Virus record (IMG/VR): IMGVR_UViG_3300028862_000012
Span: 1 to 64,000 of that record
DNA length: 64,000 bases
Direction: 5' to 3' (one strand)
The notes below the pieces were generated by a model. The model had not been told where the DNA came from. It saw nothing but the letters and a program-made list of their open reading frames with translations, and searched no databases. This document shows positions 4,884 to 53,179 of the stretch, in pieces. Both the position numbers and the translations under genes were made by a program. Within the stretch, counting starts at the first letter, position 1, and every line of letters begins with the position of its first letter.

Positions 4884-6086
4884 TTATTTATACGACCAGT
4901 CACGAGTGTTAAAGACTGCACCTAGGCTATACTGACCACTATCAATTTTAGTATACCAATCTTTTTCATATTTTACTTCATTAGTTTTATTACTAATAAT
5001 ATAATGGCCGCTTCCATTATAATCATCATGTATATACACAATACTATCACCATTCAAGGTTCTGTTTCCAGTTTTAATAGCTTCTGCTAAATCCTGACCA
5101 CTTACGATTATTCCTACTCCACCCATGCCCCCATAAGTAGCATTAGAAATTACTTCAAGTGCTTCTTTTTCTTTAAATCCAGACTTAGTTACATAATCAA
5201 CAAACTTTTGAACTTCTTCTGCTAAAGATCCATCTTCATTATAAAGATCACTCATATCAGGAATTTCAAATTCAGTTGCATCCTTCATAAAAAGACTTAC
5301 TGGCATTAAGTCATCATAATTATAAACTGCTTTAGCATCAATAGCATCCATCAACTCTTGTATCTCATCAGAATAATCATCAATTAAAGCATTAACTTCA
5401 GGTAATTCATTCTGACGTAGTAATGATTCCAAAATTCCATCTTTAACATTTTCAATATAGTCACTATTTTGATCTAGGTAGTCATCAAAATTACCCTCTT
5501 TCATATATTCAACAATAGATTTTACACTAAAAGTATCACCTGATCCTTGAGTATCAAACATACTGTATGTGCGCATCTTTTTAATTTGATTTTCCAAGTC
5601 TTTCCAATCAGGTTCTCGTGTAGCAATACCATTATCAATAGGCCAATCAATTCCTTTAGTAACAAGATCTTCAATATCTTTTACAGAATATTCTTTTAAC
5701 TGCTTAGAAATAAATTCTTGAGCTTCTTGTATATCATATCCCTCATGTTTCCAGTCCCATTGAGTAAGAACTTCTTTAAAAGCATCATCATAATCTATAG
5801 ATTCCATTACATAGTCAGTATCTTTGTCATGAAATACAAAGAAAGTTTTTCTATCTTTAAACTTATCTGTAATTTTTTCTACAATTCTATCTATTTTGTG
5901 CTGTCTGATAAACTGTTCTTTTTTCTTATCATTTTTTTCTTTGTCAGAATCTTTGTCATCTTTTTTATCATCCTTTTTAGGATCAGCAACTTTCTTTTTA
6001 CAACTCATGCAATAACCTGTATTTACTAAATACTTTGAACCACATTTAGGGCATTTAGCCGTTTCTGCGTCTTCTATTAATTTCAT
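4884..6086 (-). CDS. acidic hypothetical protein with N-terminal Zn ribbon
   Basis: CPKC...CMSC followed by a KD-rich linker. Confidence 0.65.
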   Translation of the reverse strand: MKLIEDAETAKCPKCGSKYLVNTGYCMSCKKKVADPKKDDKKDDKDSDKEKNDKKKEQFIRQHKIDRIVEKITDKFKDRKTFFVFHDKDTDYVMESIDYDDAFKEVLTQWDWKHEGYDIQEAQEFISKQLKEYSVKDIEDLVTKGIDWPIDNGIATREPDWKDLENQIKKMRTYSMFDTQGSGDTFSVKSIVEYMKEGNFDDYLDQNSDYIENVKDGILESLLRQNELPEVNALIDDYSDEIQELMDAIDAKAVYNYDDLMPVSLFMKDATEFEIPDMSDLYNEDGSLAEEVQKFVDYVTKSGFKEKEALEVISNATYGGMGGVGIIVSGQDLAEAIKTGNRTLNGDSIVYIHDDYNGSGHYIISNKTNEVKYEKDWYTKIDSGQYSLGAVFNTRDWSYK

Positions 6087-7326: not shown

Positions 7327-8991
7327 CTATCCTTTAATTTTATCTTTTACTAATGAATATTCTTCATCAGAAATAAATTCAAACAGATATCCTTTTACAA
7401 ATTTTTTCGTTTTACATCCTTTAGTTACATTAGAAGAATAAATGGAAATATCTAATATAGATATTGAGTTTTTACTTATGTAATTAGCTGATTTATAATA
7501 TCCTAATAATTTATTATCTTTATACACTTTAATAGGACGATGCTTATTAGGAATATCTATAATATTAGTATTTTTAAATAGATTTAGTTCATTTCTATTT
7601 TCTTCCAACTCATCTTTATTCATTACTTTAAAAGAAAATCCTTTATGCACTGAATTATTTTTAATACTATCAGTTATATTATTTGTTATAAGACTTATAT
7701 TAAAATTAGTTTCTAATAGCCTTATAAACTCTGCACAAGTACTAAAATACCCAATAAAATTATTTTTAAACCAAACTTCAATTGGAGTTCTATTAAAATA
7801 TTTTGAGTCTTTATCAAAAAATATAATACTTTTAGGAAATTCAATTAATTTAAATTTTTCATAATCCTCTTTAGATAAAGCTTTAAAAGACAGTCCTTTA
7901 GTAATAATTCTATCTCCCCTTATACAGGCAGAAATATTACCAGCATCTAATTTAAGTCCAAATGCTTCAAAACTTTTATTAGCACAATCTTTAGCGCATT
8001 CAAACACACCTATAAGCTTTTCATTTTTATAAGACCCTACAGGAACTAATTCTTCTTTAACTACATTTGACCACCCAAATTTATAGCCTTTAATTAAATA
8101 CTTTTGAATAGTGCGTTCTCTTAATCTTGTTTCTTTTGAAATTTCTTCTTTAGACTTTCCCTGCATATATAATTCACATACATATTTAACAAAATTACCT
8201 GTTGCAAACTTATCTACTTCAAACCAATCTATTATAGATAAGTCTAATATATTATTTAATTTAGAAGTTAAAACATTATTTTTTATAAATTCTAATTTAG
8301 AAGTTAAACAATTAATTCTTATAACTTCTATATTATTATTCTTTGCACATAAGTCTTTCTGCCTATCAATAGCCCTAACTTCTTCTTTTGACATTCCATT
8401 CATATCATTATTTTTATAATGAAAAGCACCATCCATTTCAACAATATATTTTTTATTGTCTAATTCAAAATAAAAATCATAACGTCCATGTCTAATAGAA
8501 GAGTCTATTATATAAGTACACCATTCAGGATTATATTCAGAATAGAAATATACATTTAGACTATTTAAAATATAAGTCATTAATTTTTCAGGATATGATA
8601 TAGAATCTTTACACTTACACTCCAAGGCATTTCGACATATATCTCTTATTGCAGTAGGCTTACTGAGCTTTCCGCAAAAAGGACAAATAAATTGTAATTT
8701 ATCTCCATCTGACTTCATATATTTTTTTGCATCTTCTGGATTTTGAAATAATTTTCTTAATTCTGGATATTTTACCCATACAGAATTTCTTTCCGGTAAT
8801 CGCTTTTTACAAGTACAACAATCACATACTAATCTTTTATCTGTAAAAGATCTATAACCTTTAGTATCTATAAATCCACAAATATTACATTTAAAAGTAC
8901 ATTTAAGAGTATTACCTTTTTTAAAATAATCTAATATAGTTACTGAAGTATTATTTATATTAACAACTTCTCCAATTGAATAAGTAATCAT
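7327..8991 (-). CDS. free-standing homing endonuclease-like protein (Zn fingers, Vsr/PD-(D/E)XK domain, NUMOD1-like repeats)
   Basis: CNIC/CPFC Zn motifs; RYDFYF...IVEMDGAFH; three K(L/F)IG.F/Y repeats; directly downstream of polA. Confidence 0.7.
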   Translation of the reverse strand: MITYSIGEVVNINNTSVTILDYFKKGNTLKCTFKCNICGFIDTKGYRSFTDKRLVCDCCTCKKRLPERNSVWVKYPELRKLFQNPEDAKKYMKSDGDKLQFICPFCGKLSKPTAIRDICRNALECKCKDSISYPEKLMTYILNSLNVYFYSEYNPEWCTYIIDSSIRHGRYDFYFELDNKKYIVEMDGAFHYKNNDMNGMSKEEVRAIDRQKDLCAKNNNIEVIRINCLTSKLEFIKNNVLTSKLNNILDLSIIDWFEVDKFATGNFVKYVCELYMQGKSKEEISKETRLRERTIQKYLIKGYKFGWSNVVKEELVPVGSYKNEKLIGVFECAKDCANKSFEAFGLKLDAGNISACIRGDRIITKGLSFKALSKEDYEKFKLIEFPKSIIFFDKDSKYFNRTPIEVWFKNNFIGYFSTCAEFIRLLETNFNISLITNNITDSIKNNSVHKGFSFKVMNKDELEENRNELNLFKNTNIIDIPNKHRPIKVYKDNKLLGYYKSANYISKNSISILDISIYSSNVTKGCKTKKFVKGYLFEFISDEEYSLVKDKIKG

Positions 8992-16065: not shown

Positions 16066-17241
16066 TTACTCCACTTTTATCCAAGTAAAATCTTTTACTG
16101 ATCTTTTTTCTTTTATTGATAAATAAATTCTAAATCTGTATTTAACATCTTTAAATACTAAAGAAGAAGCTTCATCTATACTATTATAAATAATATTGGT
16201 TTCTAAACACTTTACTTTAACACATCTAGGATTATTTAATCCCTTAGTTGCATTACTTCTTTTTTTAGAAAAACTTTCCATCTCCTCTTTAGTCTTATTT
16301 AATGTCCAATTTCCATTTTTTCTCCCTGTTGAATTTTTTGAACATAATATAGAAAAAGCTTGTTTTTTTTCATCTGACCAAGCTTGTCGTGTTATTCTAT
16401 TTTTATTACTTATAGCCTTTAGTTCTTCTTCTGTTTTTTCAAAACTCCAGCTTTTTTTATTTTTAGCCGCATTAGAATAATTATTAAAAATAACTTTTTT
16501 TTCTTCTTCTGTTTTATTTTCATATTTACTTTTACCTAATAGAGCTTTCGATATTTTTTTAGATATGGCTTTCTTTTCCTCTTGAGATTTTTTTGACATT
16601 GTTTTTGCCATTTTACTAATACTAATAGCTTTTTCTTCATTTGATTTATTATTCATAATAGTACTTTTTCTCTGTCTTAACAAGAGCTTTTCATTATCAG
16701 ACTTATTATTCCAAGTTTCTTTCCATTTTGAAACTCTTTTTTTAATTATTTTATCTTTTTCTTCTTTACTTTTATTTGAATTGGCTCTTTTTGCTTTTTC
16801 TATCATTTCTTTTTTCTCTTCATCTGATGCTGATAAATACCATTTCTGAAGAATATCATTTCCTATATTTATTTTCCTAAGCTTTTCAATCATTAAATCA
16901 TAGTTATCTTTAGTCATCCATTTAAAAGTATTTCCTCCTTTTCCTCCTTCATGAACATTGTAGCCCTGTTGAGTTGAAGCATAACTTTCTAATTTTTTTA
17001 TCCAATATTTTTCTTTTTCATTTAATTCATTCTTTGAACTAGAAGTATCAATGATATTCCAAGAAAAATTTTCAACACCATACTTTAATAAGGCTCTATG
17101 AAAAGGCAAAGAAGATTTTTCATAAGTTATTAGATGCTGTTTCTTTCTTAATTCTAAAGTTCTTATAGTCTGTCCTATATACTTTTTTCCATTTACTAAA
17201 TTAGTAACACAATAAATTATACCTTTACAATAATCATCCAT
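16066..17241 (-). CDS. GIY-YIG homing endonuclease with Lys-rich NUMOD3-like repeats
   Basis: GIIYCVTNLVNGKKYIGQT...ELNEKEKYWI...GYN; repeated K/E-rich helices; TAACTATTA motif upstream. Confidence 0.88.
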   Translation of the reverse strand: MDDYCKGIIYCVTNLVNGKKYIGQTIRTLELRKKQHLITYEKSSLPFHRALLKYGVENFSWNIIDTSSSKNELNEKEKYWIKKLESYASTQQGYNVHEGGKGGNTFKWMTKDNYDLMIEKLRKINIGNDILQKWYLSASDEEKKEMIEKAKRANSNKSKEEKDKIIKKRVSKWKETWNNKSDNEKLLLRQRKSTIMNNKSNEEKAISISKMAKTMSKKSQEEKKAISKKISKALLGKSKYENKTEEEKKVIFNNYSNAAKNKKSWSFEKTEEELKAISNKNRITRQAWSDEKKQAFSILCSKNSTGRKNGNWTLNKTKEEMESFSKKRSNATKGLNNPRCVKVKCLETNIIYNSIDEASSLVFKDVKYRFRIYLSIKEKRSVKDFTWIKVE

Positions 17242-23688: not shown

Positions 23689-23725
23689 AAAAAAAGTACC
23701 CCGCAATTAACCTACTGCGGAGTAC
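23689..23725 (-). terminator. intrinsic terminator
   Basis: GTACTCCGCAG-loop-TTGCGGGGTAC followed by T7 on the minus strand. Confidence 0.85.
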
Positions 23726-23798
23726 AAAATTGTTTATCATTATTGATGATAGTTGCCTAAAGGTTTATATTTCAATCTCATATTTATTTACTTCTTAT

Positions 23799-23891
23799 AA
23801 TCCTGCTCTACCACTGAGCTACTATCCAACTAAAAAATCTTAAAAAAATCTTTTAGTTGGATAGATGCGAGTCGAACGCACGACACGGATT
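23799..23891 (-). ncRNA. circularly permuted tRNA-like RNA (3' half 23891-23857, hairpin linker, 5' half 23828-23799)
   Basis: Minus strand reads AATCC-GTGTC-GTGCG TTCGACT CGCAT-CTATCCA, linker, TGGATAG-TA-GCTC AGTGGTA GAGC-A-GGATT; acceptor, D, anticodon and T stems all pair. Confidence 0.8.
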
Positions 23892-24047
23892 TGTAATATA
23901 AATATAGTTTACTATATTTCCTTTTTCTTAGGACTTATTACTGTAGTGGTAATACTCTAATTTTTTGTAACTGTTTGAGAAACAGCCACGGTTTCTAAGA
24001 AGTATGCTACTACTAAAACTGCCACTATTTAAAGACCTGTTACAGTC

Positions 24048-24791
24048 TTAATTCATAATAAAATTAATCAATTCCTTTCCGATTGAAACATCAATTACCT
24101 CTGTTTCATTTGCCTTTTCACGAGTAGACTTTACTTCAAGAATAAGTTCATCCACTTTTGAAAGAATTTTACTCTTATCCAGAGGAGAATACTTTCCACT
24201 CTGATAGTTAGTGGTATATTTTCCTACATTAGTTGTATCATCATGTACAGTGCTGGTAGGAGGAAATTTATCAGTAGCAGGAGTCAACTGCAATACCTTT
24301 TTTACCTTCATTGATCTGAAACGATTTTCAGGAGGTGCAACATAAAGCATCTTTCCTGACGTATCTGATTTACTCCACAAACGAGTAGGATCATAAGTCG
24401 GAACAGTTTTAAGCATATCCCGATACTTTACCAGATATCGTTCCAATGCAATCAAGCTAGTTGAACTAAATGTTCCAAAGGAAACTCCATTTACTTTCAG
24501 TTCTGCTTTTGCATTTCCTGAAGAATTAGTTTCTTCTTTTGCTAATGTTGCGTTCAAAGCTTTAACAAAACTTGTATTTGTATACTCAAGTTTTTCATCA
24601 ACAGTAGTGATAATATTTTTTACTTCATCAGCCAACTCTTCACCATCTTTATCAAAAGGTGCATAGATAATCTGAAATCCATCAAAGTGATCTGACTTCT
24701 TAGTAAACGTAGTAACCGTTTCTTCCATAATGTTATTAGCCTGTTTAGCTAAATCCTGTTCACAAGCAACCAATTGGTGAAGCTTTCCCAT
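24048..24791 (-). CDS. DUF7873-like protein
   Basis: MGKLHQLVACE...TKEETN...AKAELKVNG...LIALE...SGKYSP...LSKVDELILEVKSTREKAN resembles a family recalled from phages and Actinobacteria. Confidence 0.6.
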   Translation of the reverse strand: MGKLHQLVACEQDLAKQANNIMEETVTTFTKKSDHFDGFQIIYAPFDKDGEELADEVKNIITTVDEKLEYTNTSFVKALNATLAKEETNSSGNAKAELKVNGVSFGTFSSTSLIALERYLVKYRDMLKTVPTYDPTRLWSKSDTSGKMLYVAPPENRFRSMKVKKVLQLTPATDKFPPTSTVHDDTTNVGKYTTNYQSGKYSPLDKSKILSKVDELILEVKSTREKANETEVIDVSIGKELINFIMN

Positions 24792-24859: not shown

Positions 24860-27247
24860 TTATAATTCTTTTACATCTTTATATGTTTCTCCAGAAGCTA
24901 AATAGTCGCAATTAACCCAGCTAAGAGTTGCCTTAGTATCATCAATTTCTATTTGATCATTATGTGTAAAAGCATATTTAACTTTTTCAAAATATAAACC
25001 GTTTGATCTAACATCAAGCGCAATTCTATTACTTAACTTAGCATAATCTAATTCTTTATATTTTAAAGTTTCTTGCCATTTATTAGGTGCATTTGTTTTA
25101 TCATATGTATTAGGCAAAGGCGTAGTACTCCCACCAAAATAAGGATCTGCACCATGCCGTGTTTCATATGTTCGAGATACATAAACAATTTCATTAATAT
25201 CAAATTTCATTTTACGTTGCATATCTACTACATTTCGCATACCAGTATTAGAACGAGTAACATAAGGAAAATTACCCATAAACTGATCTAGTGCTAAACC
25301 TTGAGCACCTTCAAAAATTGCATATTCAAACTCTGGTATTTCAATAATAATGTGATTAAGCATAAAAGTTAAATCATCATAAAATGTTACTTGAAATTCT
25401 TCATTTTTAAATAAGTCATGCGCCCATTCTGGCATTACTTCTTTTAATTGATTATACCAATAGCGATTTATTTCATTAAACTTTTTATCAAATCTTGAAT
25501 CAAAGTTTTGAGAAATAATATAATTTATAGTTTCTTCTCTTTCAATAGTTTCACCAATTCCATAACCACAACTTCCATGTCTTGCTTTTCCACGTAGCTC
25601 TTCTTTAATTTGATTAGCAATCATATCCCATACTGTTGTAATTACGCAATTTGGATTAACATAAATTTTATAATTATCAGGAATTTTTAATTCCTTAAAC
25701 TCTTTTTTAAAAGCAGTAGGATTTAAAATAAAATGTTCTGATAGATATGTGGGAACGTTTGCAAAATAACCAGAACCAATATGAGAAAATACATGACGCT
25801 GACCTTCAGGAGTTACTACCGTATTATGAGAAATTGCACCATTAGCTATATAACTATGGGTACTATCCACTGTCAGATCATAAACATCTTCGATATCAAA
25901 TCCAAGTTCTATGTTTTCAATATCTACAATAAAATATTTTTCACACACTGAAATAATATTTGAAAACTTATTAGAAATAGTATTTTTATTATTCATAATA
26001 AATCCTGTTGTTATTTTATCTGTTTGCTTTCCTTTATTTGAAGACCCCTTAACTTCTTTTAGAATATTTCTTTTATTTGATAGTCCTATAATTAAGTCTT
26101 GACCTGAATTATTTTCATTATATACTTTTCTTTTCTCATTTAGTAAATAATCAAGTCTGTCTCTATGATAAAACGCCTCAAACCCTACTATCTCTTTAAA
26201 CCTCTCTAAGTTAGATAAAGAGCAAATTGTTAACTCATTTTGAGAAATATCAGAATGTATACCAAGAAGGTAAAGTAGCTGTTGGGTTTCTTTAATAAGA
26301 AAATGACTATTATTAAAGAATTTTATTCTTCCATAAATATTTTTACCTTTTGAATAATAAGTTATTCCTCCATCTGTATCAAACAATCCTCTTATATATC
26401 TTGCTATAATTGTTTTAGTACCCTCCATAACAAAATCTGGAGTTCTTTTTTCAGTAAGCTTTTTTAAATAGCATCCATAGGCAGTTAATACATTTAAAAA
26501 GTCTGTTGAATTTATAGTAATGGTTTTGCATTTTACTGATCTTCTATGTTGTTTAATAGTATAACTTAATCCAATTTCAATAGCAAACTGCTCTAACCAA
26601 TCAAGCACATCTTGTTTTATTTCAACATTAACTACTATTACAATTACTTTTTTTACATAATATCCATCCCCATTACATATTCCTATAAACTGTGCTAATT
26701 TTTCAATATTTATTTTTGTTAAATCAACTTTTACTTTATTATGAACAAAATCAGTCAGACTACTAACTTTTTTAATCTTATATTCTTTATTACCAGAATA
26801 AAAATTATATTCTTTTGGAAAGATAAATTGATGAATGTCTTTATTTAAATCAATCGAGCTAACCCATTCTTTATTAGAAGTTAATCCATTCCAAACATAA
26901 TATTTATGTGCATCAGTACATTTAAGTTCTACTCCATTTTTAAGACTTATTTTATTAACTTTTTTATTTTCTTCTTTATATAAAAGTGAAGTATTCTCAA
27001 TTTCTGTATTCATATTTAAAATAGATATACTTTTATTATTTGTTTCATTCCCTACTATATTCCCTAAATACTTTAATCCTGTGTTTGTATAAATAATAGT
27101 ATCTTTTGTCTGACAATGCCCTGCTTGACAACCGCCGTTGAATCTAACCACCATATCAGCATTATGTTTTCTGCAAAGGTAATCAGTCATGAGTCCTTTA
27201 CCTTCATCACCGTAATTGGCCCCTATGCAAATACTAGCCTTTTTCAT
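24860..27247 (-). CDS. purA: adenylosuccinate synthetase-like protein containing an intein
   Basis: [20 protein letters not shown]|[42 protein letters not shown]; likely start MKKASIC. Confidence 0.85.
25823..27115 (-). mobile_element. intein (431 aa) with LAGLIDADG homing endonuclease
   Basis: Starts CQTKDT after GH and ends [21 protein letters not shown] before T; FIGICNGDG and [10 protein letters not shown] motifs. Confidence 0.9.
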
Positions 27248-27330
27248 ATTCAACCTCATCATCTATATATTAATTTAAGCATATTATCAAATTAAAAGGC
27301 AAAGTATTTTTGTACTACTTTGCCTTTGTA

Positions 27331-33930: not shown

Positions 33931-34001
33931 AGGCGAGTACTGGAATCGAACCAATATTTAGAGATTAATTCATCTCTTGTCCTGCCCTAGACGAACTCGC
34001 C
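33931..34001 (-). tRNA. tRNA-like gene with an 8-nt anticodon loop, identity undetermined
   Basis: GGCGAGT/ACTCGCC, D arm GTCTAGGGCAGGAC, AGAGA TGAATTAA TCTCT, T loop TTCGATT. Confidence 0.7.
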
Positions 34002-51895: not shown

Positions 51896-51928
51896 GGAAT
51901 TATGTACTTAATTGACCAAAGTGTCAAT
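51896..51928. repeat. inverted repeat flanking tnpB (downstream copy)
   Basis: ggaattatgtacttaattgaccaaagtgtcaat is the reverse complement of 53229-53262 with 2 substitutions and 1 indel. Confidence 0.85.
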
Positions 51929-53179
51929 CTTTCTATTTTCCTGCTTCAACGAAGCATGACTTACTATAGATTTCTCTATACCAGAGGTCTTCTTCTCCAC
52001 AGGCTTAAATTCGGATGATCCCCACCCTATTTTTTCTAAATTTAATTCTTGTAATCCATAATCTACAAGATTTCTTCCAGCATTCATATCTCGACTGATT
52101 TCTTTTCCACAATTAGGACACATCCAAACTCTTTCTGATAATTGTAAATCTTTTTTCTTATATCCACAAAAGTTACAAGTCTTAGAACTTGCAAACCATT
52201 TATCAGCTTCAATCAAAGTTTTATTATACCATAAAGATTTATAACGTAATTGTCTAATAAATTCTGAATAGCCTAAATCCATAACAGATTTTCCTAAGTT
52301 TAAGGCTTGACTCATTCCTTTTAATGATAAGCTTTCTACAACTATTACGTCATTTTCAGTAATCAATTTTTTGGATAATTTATTAGTAAAATCTTTTCGT
52401 TTATTAGTAATACTTTCATAAACTACATTAATTTTATGAATACTTTTATACCAATTTTTTGATCCTTTCTGCTTACGAGATAATTGCTGTTGTAAGTGTT
52501 TTAACTTAGGCTCATTTTTTCGATATAGTCTTTCAAAATTAACAGGAGATTTCCCATATTCATCTATATAAAAACTATCCATACTCATATCTAAACCCTT
52601 GATTTTCGGGTTAGACTTTTGTACAACAGGTTTTATATCAATATCACATTCAAACAAAATAGAAACAAAAAACTTCCCTGTAGGTGATCGAGATACAGTA
52701 GCATTTTTTATACAACCATTATAGGGCTTCATTTTATTTCTAAACTTTACCCAACCAATTTTTGGAAGCTTTATTTTATCATTTAATATCTCTACAGATT
52801 TTTCACTGGTCATAGTTGTTCTATAACTATTTTTAGTTTTTTTCTTTTTAAACTTTGGAAATCCAGACTTCCCTTTTCTTTTATCAGATAAAGATTTAAA
52901 GAAATTACTATAGGCTGTTGTTAAATTAATACGAGACTGCTGTAGAGCTTGACTATCAGCTTCTTTTAGCCATTCAAACTCCTGCTTATATTCTTTTTCA
53001 GTTTTATATTTATGCTCATATAGTTTACGTTTATCATCTTTTAATAAAGTGTATGTTTGTATTCTTTCATACAACATCATATTATATAAAGCTCTACAAC
53101 ATCCTAATGTTTTATTTATTTGAGTAGTTTGTGTAGTATTAGGATAAATCCTAACTTTATAAGCCTTATAAATAATCAT
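51908..53179 (-). CDS. tnpB: TnpB (IS200/IS605 OrfB) RNA-guided endonuclease; no TnpA nearby
   Basis: YKAYKVRIYP HTH; RuvC GLD, VESL, RDMNA; Zn finger SSKTCNFCG...CPNCG. Confidence 0.93.
   Translation of the reverse strand: MIIYKAYKVRIYPNTTQTTQINKTLGCCRALYNMMLYERIQTYTLLKDDKRKLYEHKYKTEKEYKQEFEWLKEADSQALQQSRINLTTAYSNFFKSLSDKRKGKSGFPKFKKKKTKNSYRTTMTSEKSVEILNDKIKLPKIGWVKFRNKMKPYNGCIKNATVSRSPTGKFFVSILFECDIDIKPVVQKSNPKIKGLDMSMDSFYIDEYGKSPVNFERLYRKNEPKLKHLQQQLSRKQKGSKNWYKSIHKINVVYESITNKRKDFTNKLSKKLITENDVIVVESLSLKGMSQALNLGKSVMDLGYSEFIRQLRYKSLWYNKTLIEADKWFASSKTCNFCGYKKKDLQLSERVWMCPNCGKEISRDMNAGRNLVDYGLQELNLEKIGWGSSEFKPVEKKTSGIEKSIVSHASLKQENRKIDTLVN

What the first reader, a model, noticed from the sequence alone, without database searches (positions are those of the whole stretch)
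23799..23891. Circularly permuted tRNA gene in a phage (3' half precedes 5' half)
Seen: on the minus strand a complete tRNA 3' half (AATCC, 5-nt variable loop GTGTC, T arm GTGCG-TTCGACT-CGCAT, acceptor strand CTATCCA) comes first. A linker follows that extends the acceptor into a perfect 14-bp hairpin (CTATCCAACTAAAA/TTTTAGTTGGATAG). Then comes a complete 5' half (TGGATAG-TA-GCTC AGTGGTA GAGC-A-GGATT). All four stems pair with canonical spacing and the break is in the anticodon loop. Known: this topology is described for some red-algal and archaeal tRNAs and for two-piece tmRNA; I do not know it as an established phage tRNA class. Inference: the loop could be rebuilt as AU-AAG-AA (break at 37/38) or carry UUA, an ochre reader, if taken from the 3'-half leader (TATTACA). 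An RNA with no anticodon loop to cut could also be a nuclease-proof decoy. It has no CCA and no G3:U70.
Basis: partly seen in the sequence, partly recalled or inferred. Interest (0 to 1): 0.9.

Follow-up and report, generated by a model that had tools for sequence, protein, structure and literature searches.

The report
Phage tRNA-mimic RNA paired with DUF7873
The "back-to-front tRNA" is real, but it is best read as a conserved non-coding RNA that imitates a whole tRNA, of the bacterial Y-RNA (YrlA) type; in phages it follows a protein of unknown function (DUF7873) in almost every locus examined instead of the usual Ro60 partner, which points to an undescribed RNA-protein module.

Summary
On the minus strand, 23891..23799 holds, in permuted order, an anticodon-stem 3' strand, variable loop, T arm, a 7-bp acceptor stem closed by a hairpin, a D arm and the anticodon-stem 5' strand.

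It is one member of a conserved RNA family. The same element lies 100-400 nt downstream of the DUF7873 gene, on the same strand, in 48 of 52 non-redundant loci with enough flank. These include cultured Rhizobium, Klebsiella, Ralstonia, Arthrobacter, Rhodococcus and Vibrio phages. All four helices show compensatory changes.

The architecture is that of YrlA, the tRNA-mimicking bacterial and phage Y RNA. Rfam YrlA matches at 35 bits, below the gathering score of 69. The Ro60-binding motif is absent, no Ro60 gene was found in the ORFs scanned, and DUF7873 shows no detectable similarity to Ro60.

Two features are new. A 7-nt anticodon-like loop (U33, N-A-G) is kept on the 3' piece. The leader carries UNAGNN hexamer repeats with the same motif.

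A true decoding tRNA is unlikely. Position 37 is a pyrimidine in 61% of elements, the discriminator varies, there is no splicing motif, and a normal tRNA-Leu(UAG) is present in the window.

Best reading: a tRNA-mimic RNA, probably working with DUF7873. It is a new variant of a known kind. Its function is unknown; a role in tRNA-centred phage-host conflict is inferred only.

The parts
24048..24791 (-). DUF7873 gene (247 aa), the conserved upstream partner of the RNA
   Evidence: Pfam PF25283, E = 8e-60. The AlphaFold2 model has pLDDT 88.6 and no significant fold match in PDB or BFVD. hhalign against a phage Ro60 gives probability 0.2%. The family has about 2,500 clusters at 50% identity.
23993..24028 (-). 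Leader tract of NAG triplets in a 6-nt register (ATAGTG GCAGTT TTAGTA GTAGCA TACTTC TTAGAA)
   Evidence: Sequence. Across 55 leaders, a spacing of exactly 6 between successive UNAG occurs 78 times against 3.4 +/- 2.0 in shuffles; 38 of 55 leaders have at least 2 consecutive units. Such repeats are absent upstream of the Ro60-linked elements.
23971..23985 (-). Small leader hairpin CTGTTT-CTC-AAACAG
   Evidence: Sequence. The closest relative L167 has a different self-complementary hairpin (GTGAGA...TCTCAC) at the same place.
23936..23960 (-). Conserved leader block: UUAGAG followed by hairpin TATTAC-cactaca-GTAATA
   Evidence: Nearly identical in L167. It corresponds to the UNAG...UAUUGCC motif seen in many leaders.
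23893..23905 (-). 5' strand of the closing helix (ATATTTATATTAC)
   Evidence: Pairs with 23791-23780 in the minimum-free-energy fold. A compensatory T>C / A>G change is seen in L167. Family-wide, the flank-to-flank duplex is -19.0 kcal/mol against -10.8 +/- 4.0 for mismatched partners.
23882..23891 (-). Anticodon-stem 3' strand AATCC (23891-23887) and variable loop GTGTC (23886-23882)
   Evidence: The anticodon stem is 100% paired with double changes at 5 of 5 pairs in A9, though that seed was chosen for a fully paired stem. Unselected: 4.47 of 5 pairs, 40 distinct sequences, null 3.12. The Levitt pair 15:48 is G:C in 47, A:U in 6 and other in 2 of 55.
23865..23881 (-). T arm GTGCG-TTCGACT-CGCAT
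   Evidence: 99% of cells paired; 4 of 5 pairs with double changes. G53:C61 in 54 of 55.
23858..23864 (-). Acceptor-stem 3' strand CTATCCA
   Evidence: Perfect 7-bp complement of 23828-23822. 6 of 7 pairs show double changes across the family.
23829..23857 (-). Linker that closes the acceptor end; it starts with A73-C74-U75-A76 and extends the helix to 20 bp
   Evidence: Family-wide, C74 is present in 53 of 55 and A76 in 41 of 55, and CCA is encoded in 20 of 55. The helix extension reaches 3 bp or more in only 20 of 55; the others have a separate linker hairpin.
23822..23828 (-). Acceptor-stem 5' strand TGGATAG
23805..23821 (-). U8-A9 and D arm GCTC-AGTGGTA-GAGC
   Evidence: U8 in 50 of 55, A14 in 48 of 55, GG in the D loop in 55 of 55, A21 in 46 of 55.
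23799..23804 (-). N26 (A) and anticodon-stem 5' strand GGATT
23792..23798 (-). 7-nt anticodon-like loop AUAAGAA (U33, A34-A35-G36)
   Evidence: Family-wide: U33 in 47 of 54, A35 in 42 of 54, G36 in 35 of 54, position 37 a pyrimidine in 33 of 54.
23780..23791 (-). 3' strand of the closing helix (GTAAATAAATAT)
23755..23779 (-). Conserved trailer containing GATTGAAATA
   Evidence: Identical block in L167. Related ...GAAAA motifs appear in many 3' flanks.
23689..23725 (-). Intrinsic terminator (12-bp stem, U run) that ends the DUF7873-RNA unit
   Evidence: The stem keeps pairing through compensatory changes in L167.

Best explanation
The locus encodes a structured non-coding RNA of roughly 130-330 nt. 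It is transcribed with, or just after, the DUF7873 gene and ends at the terminator at 23725-23696.

Its core folds into a complete tRNA L-shape whose chain is circularly permuted. The acceptor end is closed by a hairpin. The RNA's own 5' and 3' ends emerge from the 3' edge of a 7-nt anticodon-like loop and pair with each other. This is the design of YrlA-type Y RNAs, so the RNA is a tRNA mimic and not a decoding tRNA.

In this family the partner is DUF7873, not Ro60. I infer that DUF7873, probably as an oligomer, binds the UNAG motif. That motif occurs as 6-nt-spaced repeats in the leader and once in the anticodon-like loop. Binding would give an RNA-protein particle that displays a tRNA-shaped module.

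[quoted passage not shown] It probably acts in tRNA-centred processes during infection: tRNA surveillance or repair, or occupying a host factor that targets tRNA.

Shown: the structure, its conservation and covariation, the linkage to DUF7873, the repeats, and the absence of the Ro60 signature. Inferred: binding by DUF7873, processing, and function.
For: Structure and significance: 95.2% of cells paired against 64.6% in shuffles; 19 of 21 pairs with double changes; covariation score 0.874 against 0.16-0.24 for slid controls; 73.7 bits from a model not trained on the window.

tRNA tertiary signature: U8, A14, G18G19, A21 and 15:48 covariation.

Class: Rfam YrlA is the best hit here (35 bits, E = 7e-6). 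It also matches downstream of DUF7873 in five of eight cultured-phage loci (29-38 bits); two Vibrio loci show only a partial tmRNA-model match, and model R1 finds the element in all eight.

Linkage: 48 of 52 non-redundant DUF7873 loci have the element downstream on the same strand. Three of the four exceptions are technical (an unsearched copy of the window, two split genes with the element present). In the fourth, L038, the element lies upstream.

Unbiased test: an IMG/VR pattern scan gave 93 matches, 19 with a 7/7 complementary acceptor. Of these, 13 have DUF7873 138-274 nt upstream. At least 2 sit next to Ro60/TROVE genes. None of the 67 matches with five or fewer complementary acceptor pairs has DUF7873; nor do the 7 with six.

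UNAG: loop statistics; hexamer periodicity 78 against 3.4 +/- 2.0, absent at Ro60-linked copies.

Conservation: the spacer is 80% identical where the protein is 62% identical.

Precedent: YrlA carries tRNA modifications, and M. smegmatis YrlA with a 7-bp acceptor is cut by RNase P and receives CCA (PMC4201824).
Against: No expression, processing or binding data exist for any member.

DUF7873 is not basic (median pI 6.7) and has no recognisable RNA-binding fold.

Seven DUF7873 homologues in Bacteroidota MAG contigs are solo genes with no such RNA within 1.5 kb. The protein therefore does not strictly need this RNA.

The Rfam YrlA score is half the gathering threshold.

In the window the acceptor is a continuous 20-bp duplex, a poor RNase P substrate.

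No RNA-repair genes were found among 26 window ORFs scanned.

The geometry of the junction between the loop and the closing helix varies between members.
Confidence: 0.6

Rival explanations
1. It is a genuine circularly permuted tRNA gene. The transcript is cut at both sides of the closing helix, position 38 is ligated to 39 (through a circular intermediate), RNase P and 3' processing open the acceptor, CCA is added, and the product decodes CUN (Leu) codons. DUF7873 might be the maturation factor.
For: After in-silico re-joining, ARAGORN accepts 54 of 55 elements as tRNA, 35 of them as tRNA-Leu with anticodon NAG. The 7-nt loop has U33 in 47 of 54, C74 is present in 53 of 55, A76 in 41 of 55, and CCA is encoded in 20 of 55. 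The tertiary nucleotides are intact. The module sits in tRNA gene clusters.
Against: Position 37 is a pyrimidine in 33 of 54, whereas it is almost always a purine in real tRNAs (my knowledge; counts). The discriminator is A, U, G or C with no identity pattern. The variable loop is 4-5 nt, not the long arm of bacterial tRNA-Leu. No bulge-helix-bulge motif is present, and no protein tRNA-splicing endonuclease is known in bacteria or phages (my knowledge). The window already has tRNA-Leu(tag), and phage Mimi has Leu(gag) and Leu(tag). UNAG also occurs as leader repeats. Ro60-linked RNAs share the topology, and PMC4201824 characterises them as tRNA-mimicking Y RNAs and thinks aminoacylation unlikely to be general.
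Confidence: 0.07
2. It is a stand-alone decoy. The RNA mimics tRNA (a Leu-type anticodon loop) to soak up a host tRNA-directed nuclease, modifier or toxin, and DUF7873 is only a neighbour or regulator.
For: It is a full tRNA mimic with a conserved anticodon-like loop that cannot be inactivated in the normal way, because the strand ends leave the loop. It is placed among phage tRNA genes, which are thought to offset host attacks on tRNA (PMC7824862).
Against: A decoy does not explain the near-obligate, same-strand, fixed-order linkage to one protein across phages of several bacterial phyla. It also does not explain the conserved leader with hexamer repeats. No anticodon nuclease specific for tRNA-Leu NAG was identified here. 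N34 varies freely and position 37 is unlike tRNA-Leu.
Confidence: 0.15
3. It is a cis-acting 3'-UTR element of the DUF7873 mRNA. The tRNA-like fold serves as a processing or stability signal (an RNase P or exonuclease block), and the UNAG repeats are an autoregulatory binding site.
For: The element is always immediately downstream on the same strand. In the window there is no terminator between gene and RNA, only one after it, and no sigma-70-like promoter in the spacer upstream of the RNA on that strand.
Against: Simple processing signals do not need preserved Levitt-pair covariation, a 5-bp anticodon stem and a 7-nt loop. The spacer is more conserved than the gene. Solo DUF7873 genes manage without it. 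Distant phages carry two tandem tRNA-like elements.
Confidence: 0.12
4. It is a chance or degenerate arrangement: the remains of two adjacent tRNA genes, or an attachment-site remnant.
For: Tandem tRNA genes do give false matches to T-arm-then-D-arm models (also noted in PMC4201824).
Against: The acceptor and anticodon strands of the two halves are complementary to each other and covary across more than 50 loci. ARAGORN and Rfam find no ordinary tRNA overlapping it. In the pattern scan, none of the 67 matches with five or fewer complementary acceptor pairs has DUF7873 nearby.
Confidence: 0.01

Closest known systems
YrlA / bacterial and phage Y RNAs (Rfam RF02553; Chen et al. 2014, PMC4201824)
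   Same: The order is T arm, closed acceptor-like stem-loop, D arm. An anticodon-stem-like helix runs into a stem formed by the RNA's two ends. tRNA tertiary nucleotides are kept, including 15:48 covariation. The RNA is encoded next to, and on the same strand as, a dedicated protein gene. It is found in large phages.
   Different: The score is half the Rfam gathering threshold. The GNCGAAN0-1G Ro60 site is absent (1 of 53). The partner is DUF7873, which shows no detectable similarity to Ro60. There is a full 7-bp acceptor with an N-C-Y-A tail and a conserved 7-nt anticodon-like loop with U33-N-A-G. The leader carries UNAG hexamer repeats.
Circularly permuted tRNA genes of the red alga Cyanidioschyzon merolae and other algae
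   Same: The 3' half is encoded before the 5' half, all four arms are present, and a linker joins the acceptor strands.
   Different: Those have a bulge-helix-bulge motif, a circular intermediate made by the eukaryal/archaeal splicing machinery, and normal anticodon loops. Here there is no such motif, position 37 is usually a pyrimidine, and bacteria and phages are not known to have that machinery.
Two-piece (permuted) tmRNA
   Same: A T arm and acceptor 3' strand (often with CCA) are followed by an intervening loop and the acceptor 5' strand. This explains the partial beta_tmRNA model hits.
   Different: There is no tag reading frame and there are no pseudoknots. ARAGORN finds no tmRNA. The score is 18.9 bits against a gathering score of 84.
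TRAP-binding (G/U)AG triplet repeats in Bacillus trp leader RNA (from my knowledge; functional analogy only)
   Same: NAG triplets are repeated with short fixed spacers in a leader, which is the hallmark of an oligomeric RNA-binding protein.
   Different: No homology is claimed. The period here is strictly 6 nt with a preceding U, there are 2-5 units per tract, and binding is untested.

Membership tests
YrlA (Y RNA-like, RF02553) | tRNA-like domain in the order T arm, closed acceptor-like stem, D arm, closed by a stem made of the RNA ends | tested here: met
YrlA (Y RNA-like, RF02553) | Reaches the Rfam gathering score (69 bits) | tested here: not met
   35 bits in the window; 29-38 bits in five of the cultured-phage loci.
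YrlA (Y RNA-like, RF02553) | GNCGAAN0-1G motif near the 5' end (presumed Ro60/Rsr contact) | tested here: not met
   Present in 1 of 53 5' flanks and absent in the window. It is present (GCCGAAG) in the Ro60-linked control L151.
YrlA (Y RNA-like, RF02553) | Encoded within about 4 kb of a Ro60/TROVE gene on the same strand | tested here: not met
   The neighbours are DUF7873 and an intein-containing PurA. No TROVE domain was found among 26 window ORFs scanned, including the 10 largest. None is annotated in 8 cultured-phage loci. The rest of the 224-kb contig was not examined.
YrlA (Y RNA-like, RF02553) | Bound by Ro60 and carrying tRNA modifications in vivo | not testable with these tools
   Needs immunoprecipitation and modification mapping.
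Circularly permuted tRNA gene (functional tRNA) | 3' half upstream of 5' half, with all four arms and canonical spacing | tested here: met
   (ARAGORN accepts 54 of 55 after re-joining).
Circularly permuted tRNA gene (functional tRNA) | Bulge-helix-bulge motif formed by leader and trailer at the junction | tested here: not met
   The window junction is a 7-nt bulge opposite 1 nt followed by a helix. The geometry varies between members.
Circularly permuted tRNA gene (functional tRNA) | Anticodon loop fit for decoding (U33, purine 37) and consistent identity elements | tested here: not met
   U33 is kept (47 of 54), but position 37 is a pyrimidine in 33 of 54 and the discriminator is A 21 / U 20 / G 9 / C 5.
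Circularly permuted tRNA gene (functional tRNA) | Circular intermediate, and a mature re-ligated, aminoacylated tRNA | not testable with these tools
   Needs circular RT-PCR, small-RNA sequencing and acid gels.
Two-piece tmRNA | Tag-peptide reading frame and pseudoknots; detection by ARAGORN or Rfam | tested here: not met
   No tmRNA was found. The beta_tmRNA match covers model positions 86-150 only, at 18.9 bits against a gathering score of 84.
Canonical tRNA (RF00005) | Linear cloverleaf detected by tRNA models | tested here: not met
   ARAGORN lists ten ordinary tRNAs in the window (Rfam's tRNA model recovers eight of them); neither tool reports a tRNA at this locus.

The most novel reading that the evidence does not exclude
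The RNA is a true split or permuted tRNA precursor. It would be opened at the acceptor by RNase P and given CCA. It would then either stay as a two-piece, aminoacylatable tRNA-like molecule or be re-ligated at 38/39. DUF7873 would be the dedicated maturation or delivery factor. This would be a protein-assisted permuted-tRNA pathway in phages with no known counterpart in bacteria.
Probability: 0.08. Interest if true: 0.95.

Novelty: new variant of a known kind. Interest (0 to 1): 0.72.

Why it matters
DUF7873 is a large, uncharacterised family of about 2,500 clusters at 50% identity. It is found in large phages of Proteobacteria, Actinobacteria, Bacteroidota and cyanobacteria. No paper in the library searched mentions it.

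Showing that DUF7873 is almost always followed by a tRNA-shaped RNA gives the family its first functional handle. It also suggests that tRNA-mimic Y-like RNAs have been recruited at least twice by apparently unrelated proteins, Ro60 and DUF7873.

The work gives annotators a model for an RNA that current tRNA and Rfam pipelines miss. That RNA lies in the unannotated 350-700-nt gaps of published genomes such as RSL1, KpLz-2_45, Mimi and NiceHouse.

If the particle acts on tRNA damage or tRNA-targeting defences, it would add a new player to phage-host conflicts over the translation apparatus.

Tried and rejected
- DNA searches of the locus against 50,697 phage records found nothing, by megablast or blastn.
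- PHROGs, NCBIfam and PADLOC gave no usable hit for DUF7873.
- The PDB sequence search gave only a weak PLAAT/LRAT-like match (E = 0.04) with one sequence and nothing with the profile. I rejected it.
- Foldseek against PDB and BFVD gave no significant match.
- I looked for a second tRNA-like element in the window spacer, as exists in distant phages. None was found.
- I looked for Ro60, RtcB or RNA-ligase genes among 26 window ORFs. None was found.
- I tried to define a fixed junction geometry (a 7-nt bulge opposite 0-1 nt) for the whole family. The constrained folds gave variable and partly unreliable results, so I make no general claim.
- I tested for pairing between the UNAG loop and the NCYA tail by eye. 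There is no covariation.
- The idea that UNAG mimics stop codons was rejected because UCAG is common.

Full report
**1. The observation.** On the minus strand the sequence reads, 5' to 3':
- AATCC (23891-23887)
- GTGTC
- GTGCG-TTCGACT-CGCAT
- CTATCCA (23864-23858)
- a 29-nt linker
- TGGATAG (23828-22)
- TA
- GCTC-AGTGGTA-GAGC
- A
- GGATT (23803-23799)

ARAGORN lists ten ordinary tRNAs at 28.6-34.3 kb and Rfam's tRNA model recovers eight of them; neither reports a tRNA here. A 138-nt stretch folds to -43.7 kcal/mol (z = -6.8; 0 of 200 shuffles as good). In that fold the acceptor hairpin extends to 20 bp and the two flanks pair.

**2. What the databases say.** A permissive Rfam scan gives one clear answer: YrlA, the 'Y RNA-like' tRNA mimic. 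The match covers 23781-23905 on the minus strand at 35 bits, E = 7e-6, full model length, with the middle (Ro60-binding) helix deleted. The gathering score is 69. Chen et al. 2014 (PMC4201824) describe this topology: T arm, closed acceptor-like stem, D arm, and a closing stem made by the RNA ends. They found it beside Ro60 genes in 254 bacteria and 22 phages. Their M. smegmatis YrlA has a 7-bp acceptor, is cut by RNase P and receives CCA. The topology is therefore already known in phages.

**3. Context.** The window is part of a 223,865-bp IMG/VR contig with 28.9% G+C. The upstream gene (24048-24791, minus strand) is DUF7873 (E = 8e-60). Before it lies an adenylosuccinate synthetase interrupted by an intein. 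An intrinsic terminator follows the RNA at 23725-23696. No TROVE/Ro60 domain or RNA-repair enzyme was found in 26 ORFs scanned.

**4. Conservation.**
- tblastn finds DUF7873 in 82 phage records at less than 40% identity.
- In eight diverse cultured phages the gene is followed by an unannotated 350-700-nt gap, often inside a tRNA cluster.
- Rfam finds a YrlA-like match in that gap in five of them; two Vibrio loci show only a partial tmRNA-model match, and model R1 finds the element in all eight.
- An alignment of eight elements shows the T arm, 7-bp acceptor and D arm with compensatory changes at 18 of 21 pairs.
- A covariance model (R1) finds the element downstream, on the same strand, in 48 of 52 non-redundant DUF7873 loci with at least 400 nt of flank. 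Three of the four exceptions are technical (an unsearched copy of the window, two split genes with the element present). In the fourth, L038, the element lies upstream.
- On a MAFFT alignment of 20 elements, 95.2% of cells pair against 64.6% in shuffles. 19 of 21 pairs show double changes. The covariation score is 0.874 against 0.16-0.24 when partners are slid. The anticodon stem of that seed was pre-selected to be fully paired.
- The unselected figure for the anticodon stem is 4.47 of 5 pairs, with 40 distinct sequences, against 3.12 for mismatched partners.
- A model built from those 20 sequences, without the window, scores the window at 73.7 bits, E = 4.5e-19.
- The closest relative has 62% protein identity but 80% identity across the spacer. 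It shows compensatory changes in the T, acceptor and anticodon stems, the closing helix and the terminator.

**5. tRNA likeness.** The tertiary nucleotides are kept: U8 in 50 of 55, A14 in 48, GG in the D loop in 55, A21 in 46. The Levitt pair 15:48 covaries (G:C 47, A:U 6, other 2). After the D arm come N26, a 5-nt stem strand and then 7 nt with the pattern N-U-N-A-G-N-N. U33 occurs in 47 of 54, A35 in 42 and G36 in 35. After joining position 38 to 39 in silico, ARAGORN accepts 54 of 55 elements as tRNA, 35 of them as tRNA-Leu(NAG). The window gives Leu(aag). After the acceptor 3' strand the tail is N-C-Y-A: C74 in 53 of 55, A76 in 41 of 55, a true CCA in 20 of 55. In 35 of 55 the tail is not simply stacked into the acceptor helix. 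The ends of the RNA pair beyond the loop, at -19.0 kcal/mol against -10.8 +/- 4.0 for mismatched partners.

**6. Why it is not a decoding tRNA.**
- Position 37 is a pyrimidine in 33 of 54, and the discriminator varies.
- The variable loop is short, unlike bacterial tRNA-Leu.
- No bulge-helix-bulge motif is present.
- Ordinary tRNA-Leu genes coexist with the element.
- The UNAG motif is not unique to the loop. The leader between the gene and the core carries UNAGNN repeats. A spacing of exactly 6 between successive UNAG occurs 78 times against 3.4 +/- 2.0 in shuffles. 38 of 55 leaders have at least 2 units and 20 have at least 3. A coding-region control shows no such peak at a spacing of 6 (10 occurrences).
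- In the window the tract is 24028-23993.

A motif that recurs in a fixed register looks like the footprint of an oligomeric RNA-binding protein.

**7. Partner protein.** An unbiased scan of IMG/VR for a T-loop followed 35-62 nt later by a D arm gave 93 matches.
- 19 have a 7/7 complementary acceptor. Of these, 13 have DUF7873 138-274 nt upstream on the same strand, and one more lacks upstream flank.
- Two (L102, L151) lie beside Ro60/TROVE genes and are classic phage YrlAs. L151 has the GCCGAAG Ro60 motif.
- None of the 67 matches with five or fewer complementary acceptor pairs has DUF7873; nor do the 7 with six.
- The Ro60-linked copies lack the hexamer repeats.
- The DUF7873-linked ones lack the Ro60 motif (1 of 53).

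DUF7873 models confidently (pLDDT 88.6), but nothing significant matches in PDB or BFVD. hhalign against Ro60 gives probability 0.2%. The family has about 2,500 clusters at 50% identity, all around 250 aa.

Caveats: the protein is not basic. Seven homologues in Bacteroidota MAG contigs are solo chromosomal genes with no such RNA. They sit next to EPSP synthase, or next to the tRNA thiouridylase MnmA and a glycosyltransferase.

**8. Interpretation.** The best-supported reading is a YrlA-type tRNA-mimic RNA that has a different dedicated protein, DUF7873, and a different protein-binding signature, UNAG in place of GNCGAA. Binding, processing by tRNA enzymes and a role in tRNA-centred conflict are inferences by analogy (PMC4201824; PMC7824862). 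The rivals cannot be fully excluded without RNA data: a true permuted tRNA, a protein-independent decoy, and a cis-acting 3'-UTR element. The tandem-tRNA artefact is excluded.

**9. Verdict.** The finding is a new variant of a known kind. It gives a concrete lead into a large uncharacterised phage protein family.

Noticed in passing
window 23936-24028 (minus strand): The leader upstream of the tRNA-like core is itself conserved. It contains NAG triplets in a 6-nt register, two small hairpins, and blocks such as GUAUUACCACUACAG and AUAAGUCCU that are identical in the closest relative. Related leaders show the motifs GAGCUAG, UAUUGCC and AAGUCUU.
   Followed up: partly
L004:3360-3439, L005:3319-3391, L006:3387-3484, L007:3411-3483, L020:2307-2390, L069:2229-2314: In distant phages (KpLz-2_45, Mimi, RSL1, NiceHouse and others) a second, shorter permuted tRNA-like element lies between DUF7873 and the main one. 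It often has ACCA after the acceptor and a tRNA-Leu-type D arm (GCGGAAUUGGUAGACGC). This recalls the YrlA/YrlB pairs of Ro60 loci.
   Followed up: partly
L171, L177, L183, L184, L185, L187, L190: These are solo DUF7873 genes in Bacteroidota MAG contigs with no tRNA-like RNA within 1.5 kb. They are flanked by housekeeping genes (EPSP synthase, or the tRNA 2-thiouridylase MnmA and a glycosyltransferase). A cellular DUF7873 might act on ordinary tRNAs.
   Followed up: partly
L102:4784-4854 and 5520-5696; L151:3436-3526: These are Ro60/TROVE-linked YrlA-like elements in other IMG/VR phage contigs. In L102 a manA RNA motif (57.4 bits, above its gathering score of 55.2) lies between the YrlA-like element and the Ro60 gene.
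   Followed up: partly
L134:2586-2673, L159:2294-2382: These permuted tRNA-like elements have perfectly complementary acceptors and are next to neither DUF7873 nor Ro60. One is near a cytosine DNA methylase and one is inside a 16-tRNA cluster. Further partner classes may exist.
   Followed up: no
window 24860-27262 (minus strand): The adenylosuccinate synthetase gene is interrupted by an intein with a LAGLIDADG homing-endonuclease domain.
   Followed up: no
window 33931-34001 (minus strand): ARAGORN reports a tRNA of undetermined identity with a four-base anticodon (aatt). The loop reads GAAUUAA and lacks U33.
   Followed up: no
window 51908-53179 (minus strand): This is a TnpB / IS605 OrfB-type protein (Cas12f-like TNB domain) inside the phage genome. 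GIY-YIG (16066-17241) and I-HmuI/NUMOD-like (7327-8991) homing-endonuclease-type genes are also present.
   Followed up: no
L005:1665-1695: A near-threshold match to the abiF RNA motif (33 bits; gathering score 37) lies within the tRNA cluster of Arthrobacter phage Mimi.
   Followed up: no
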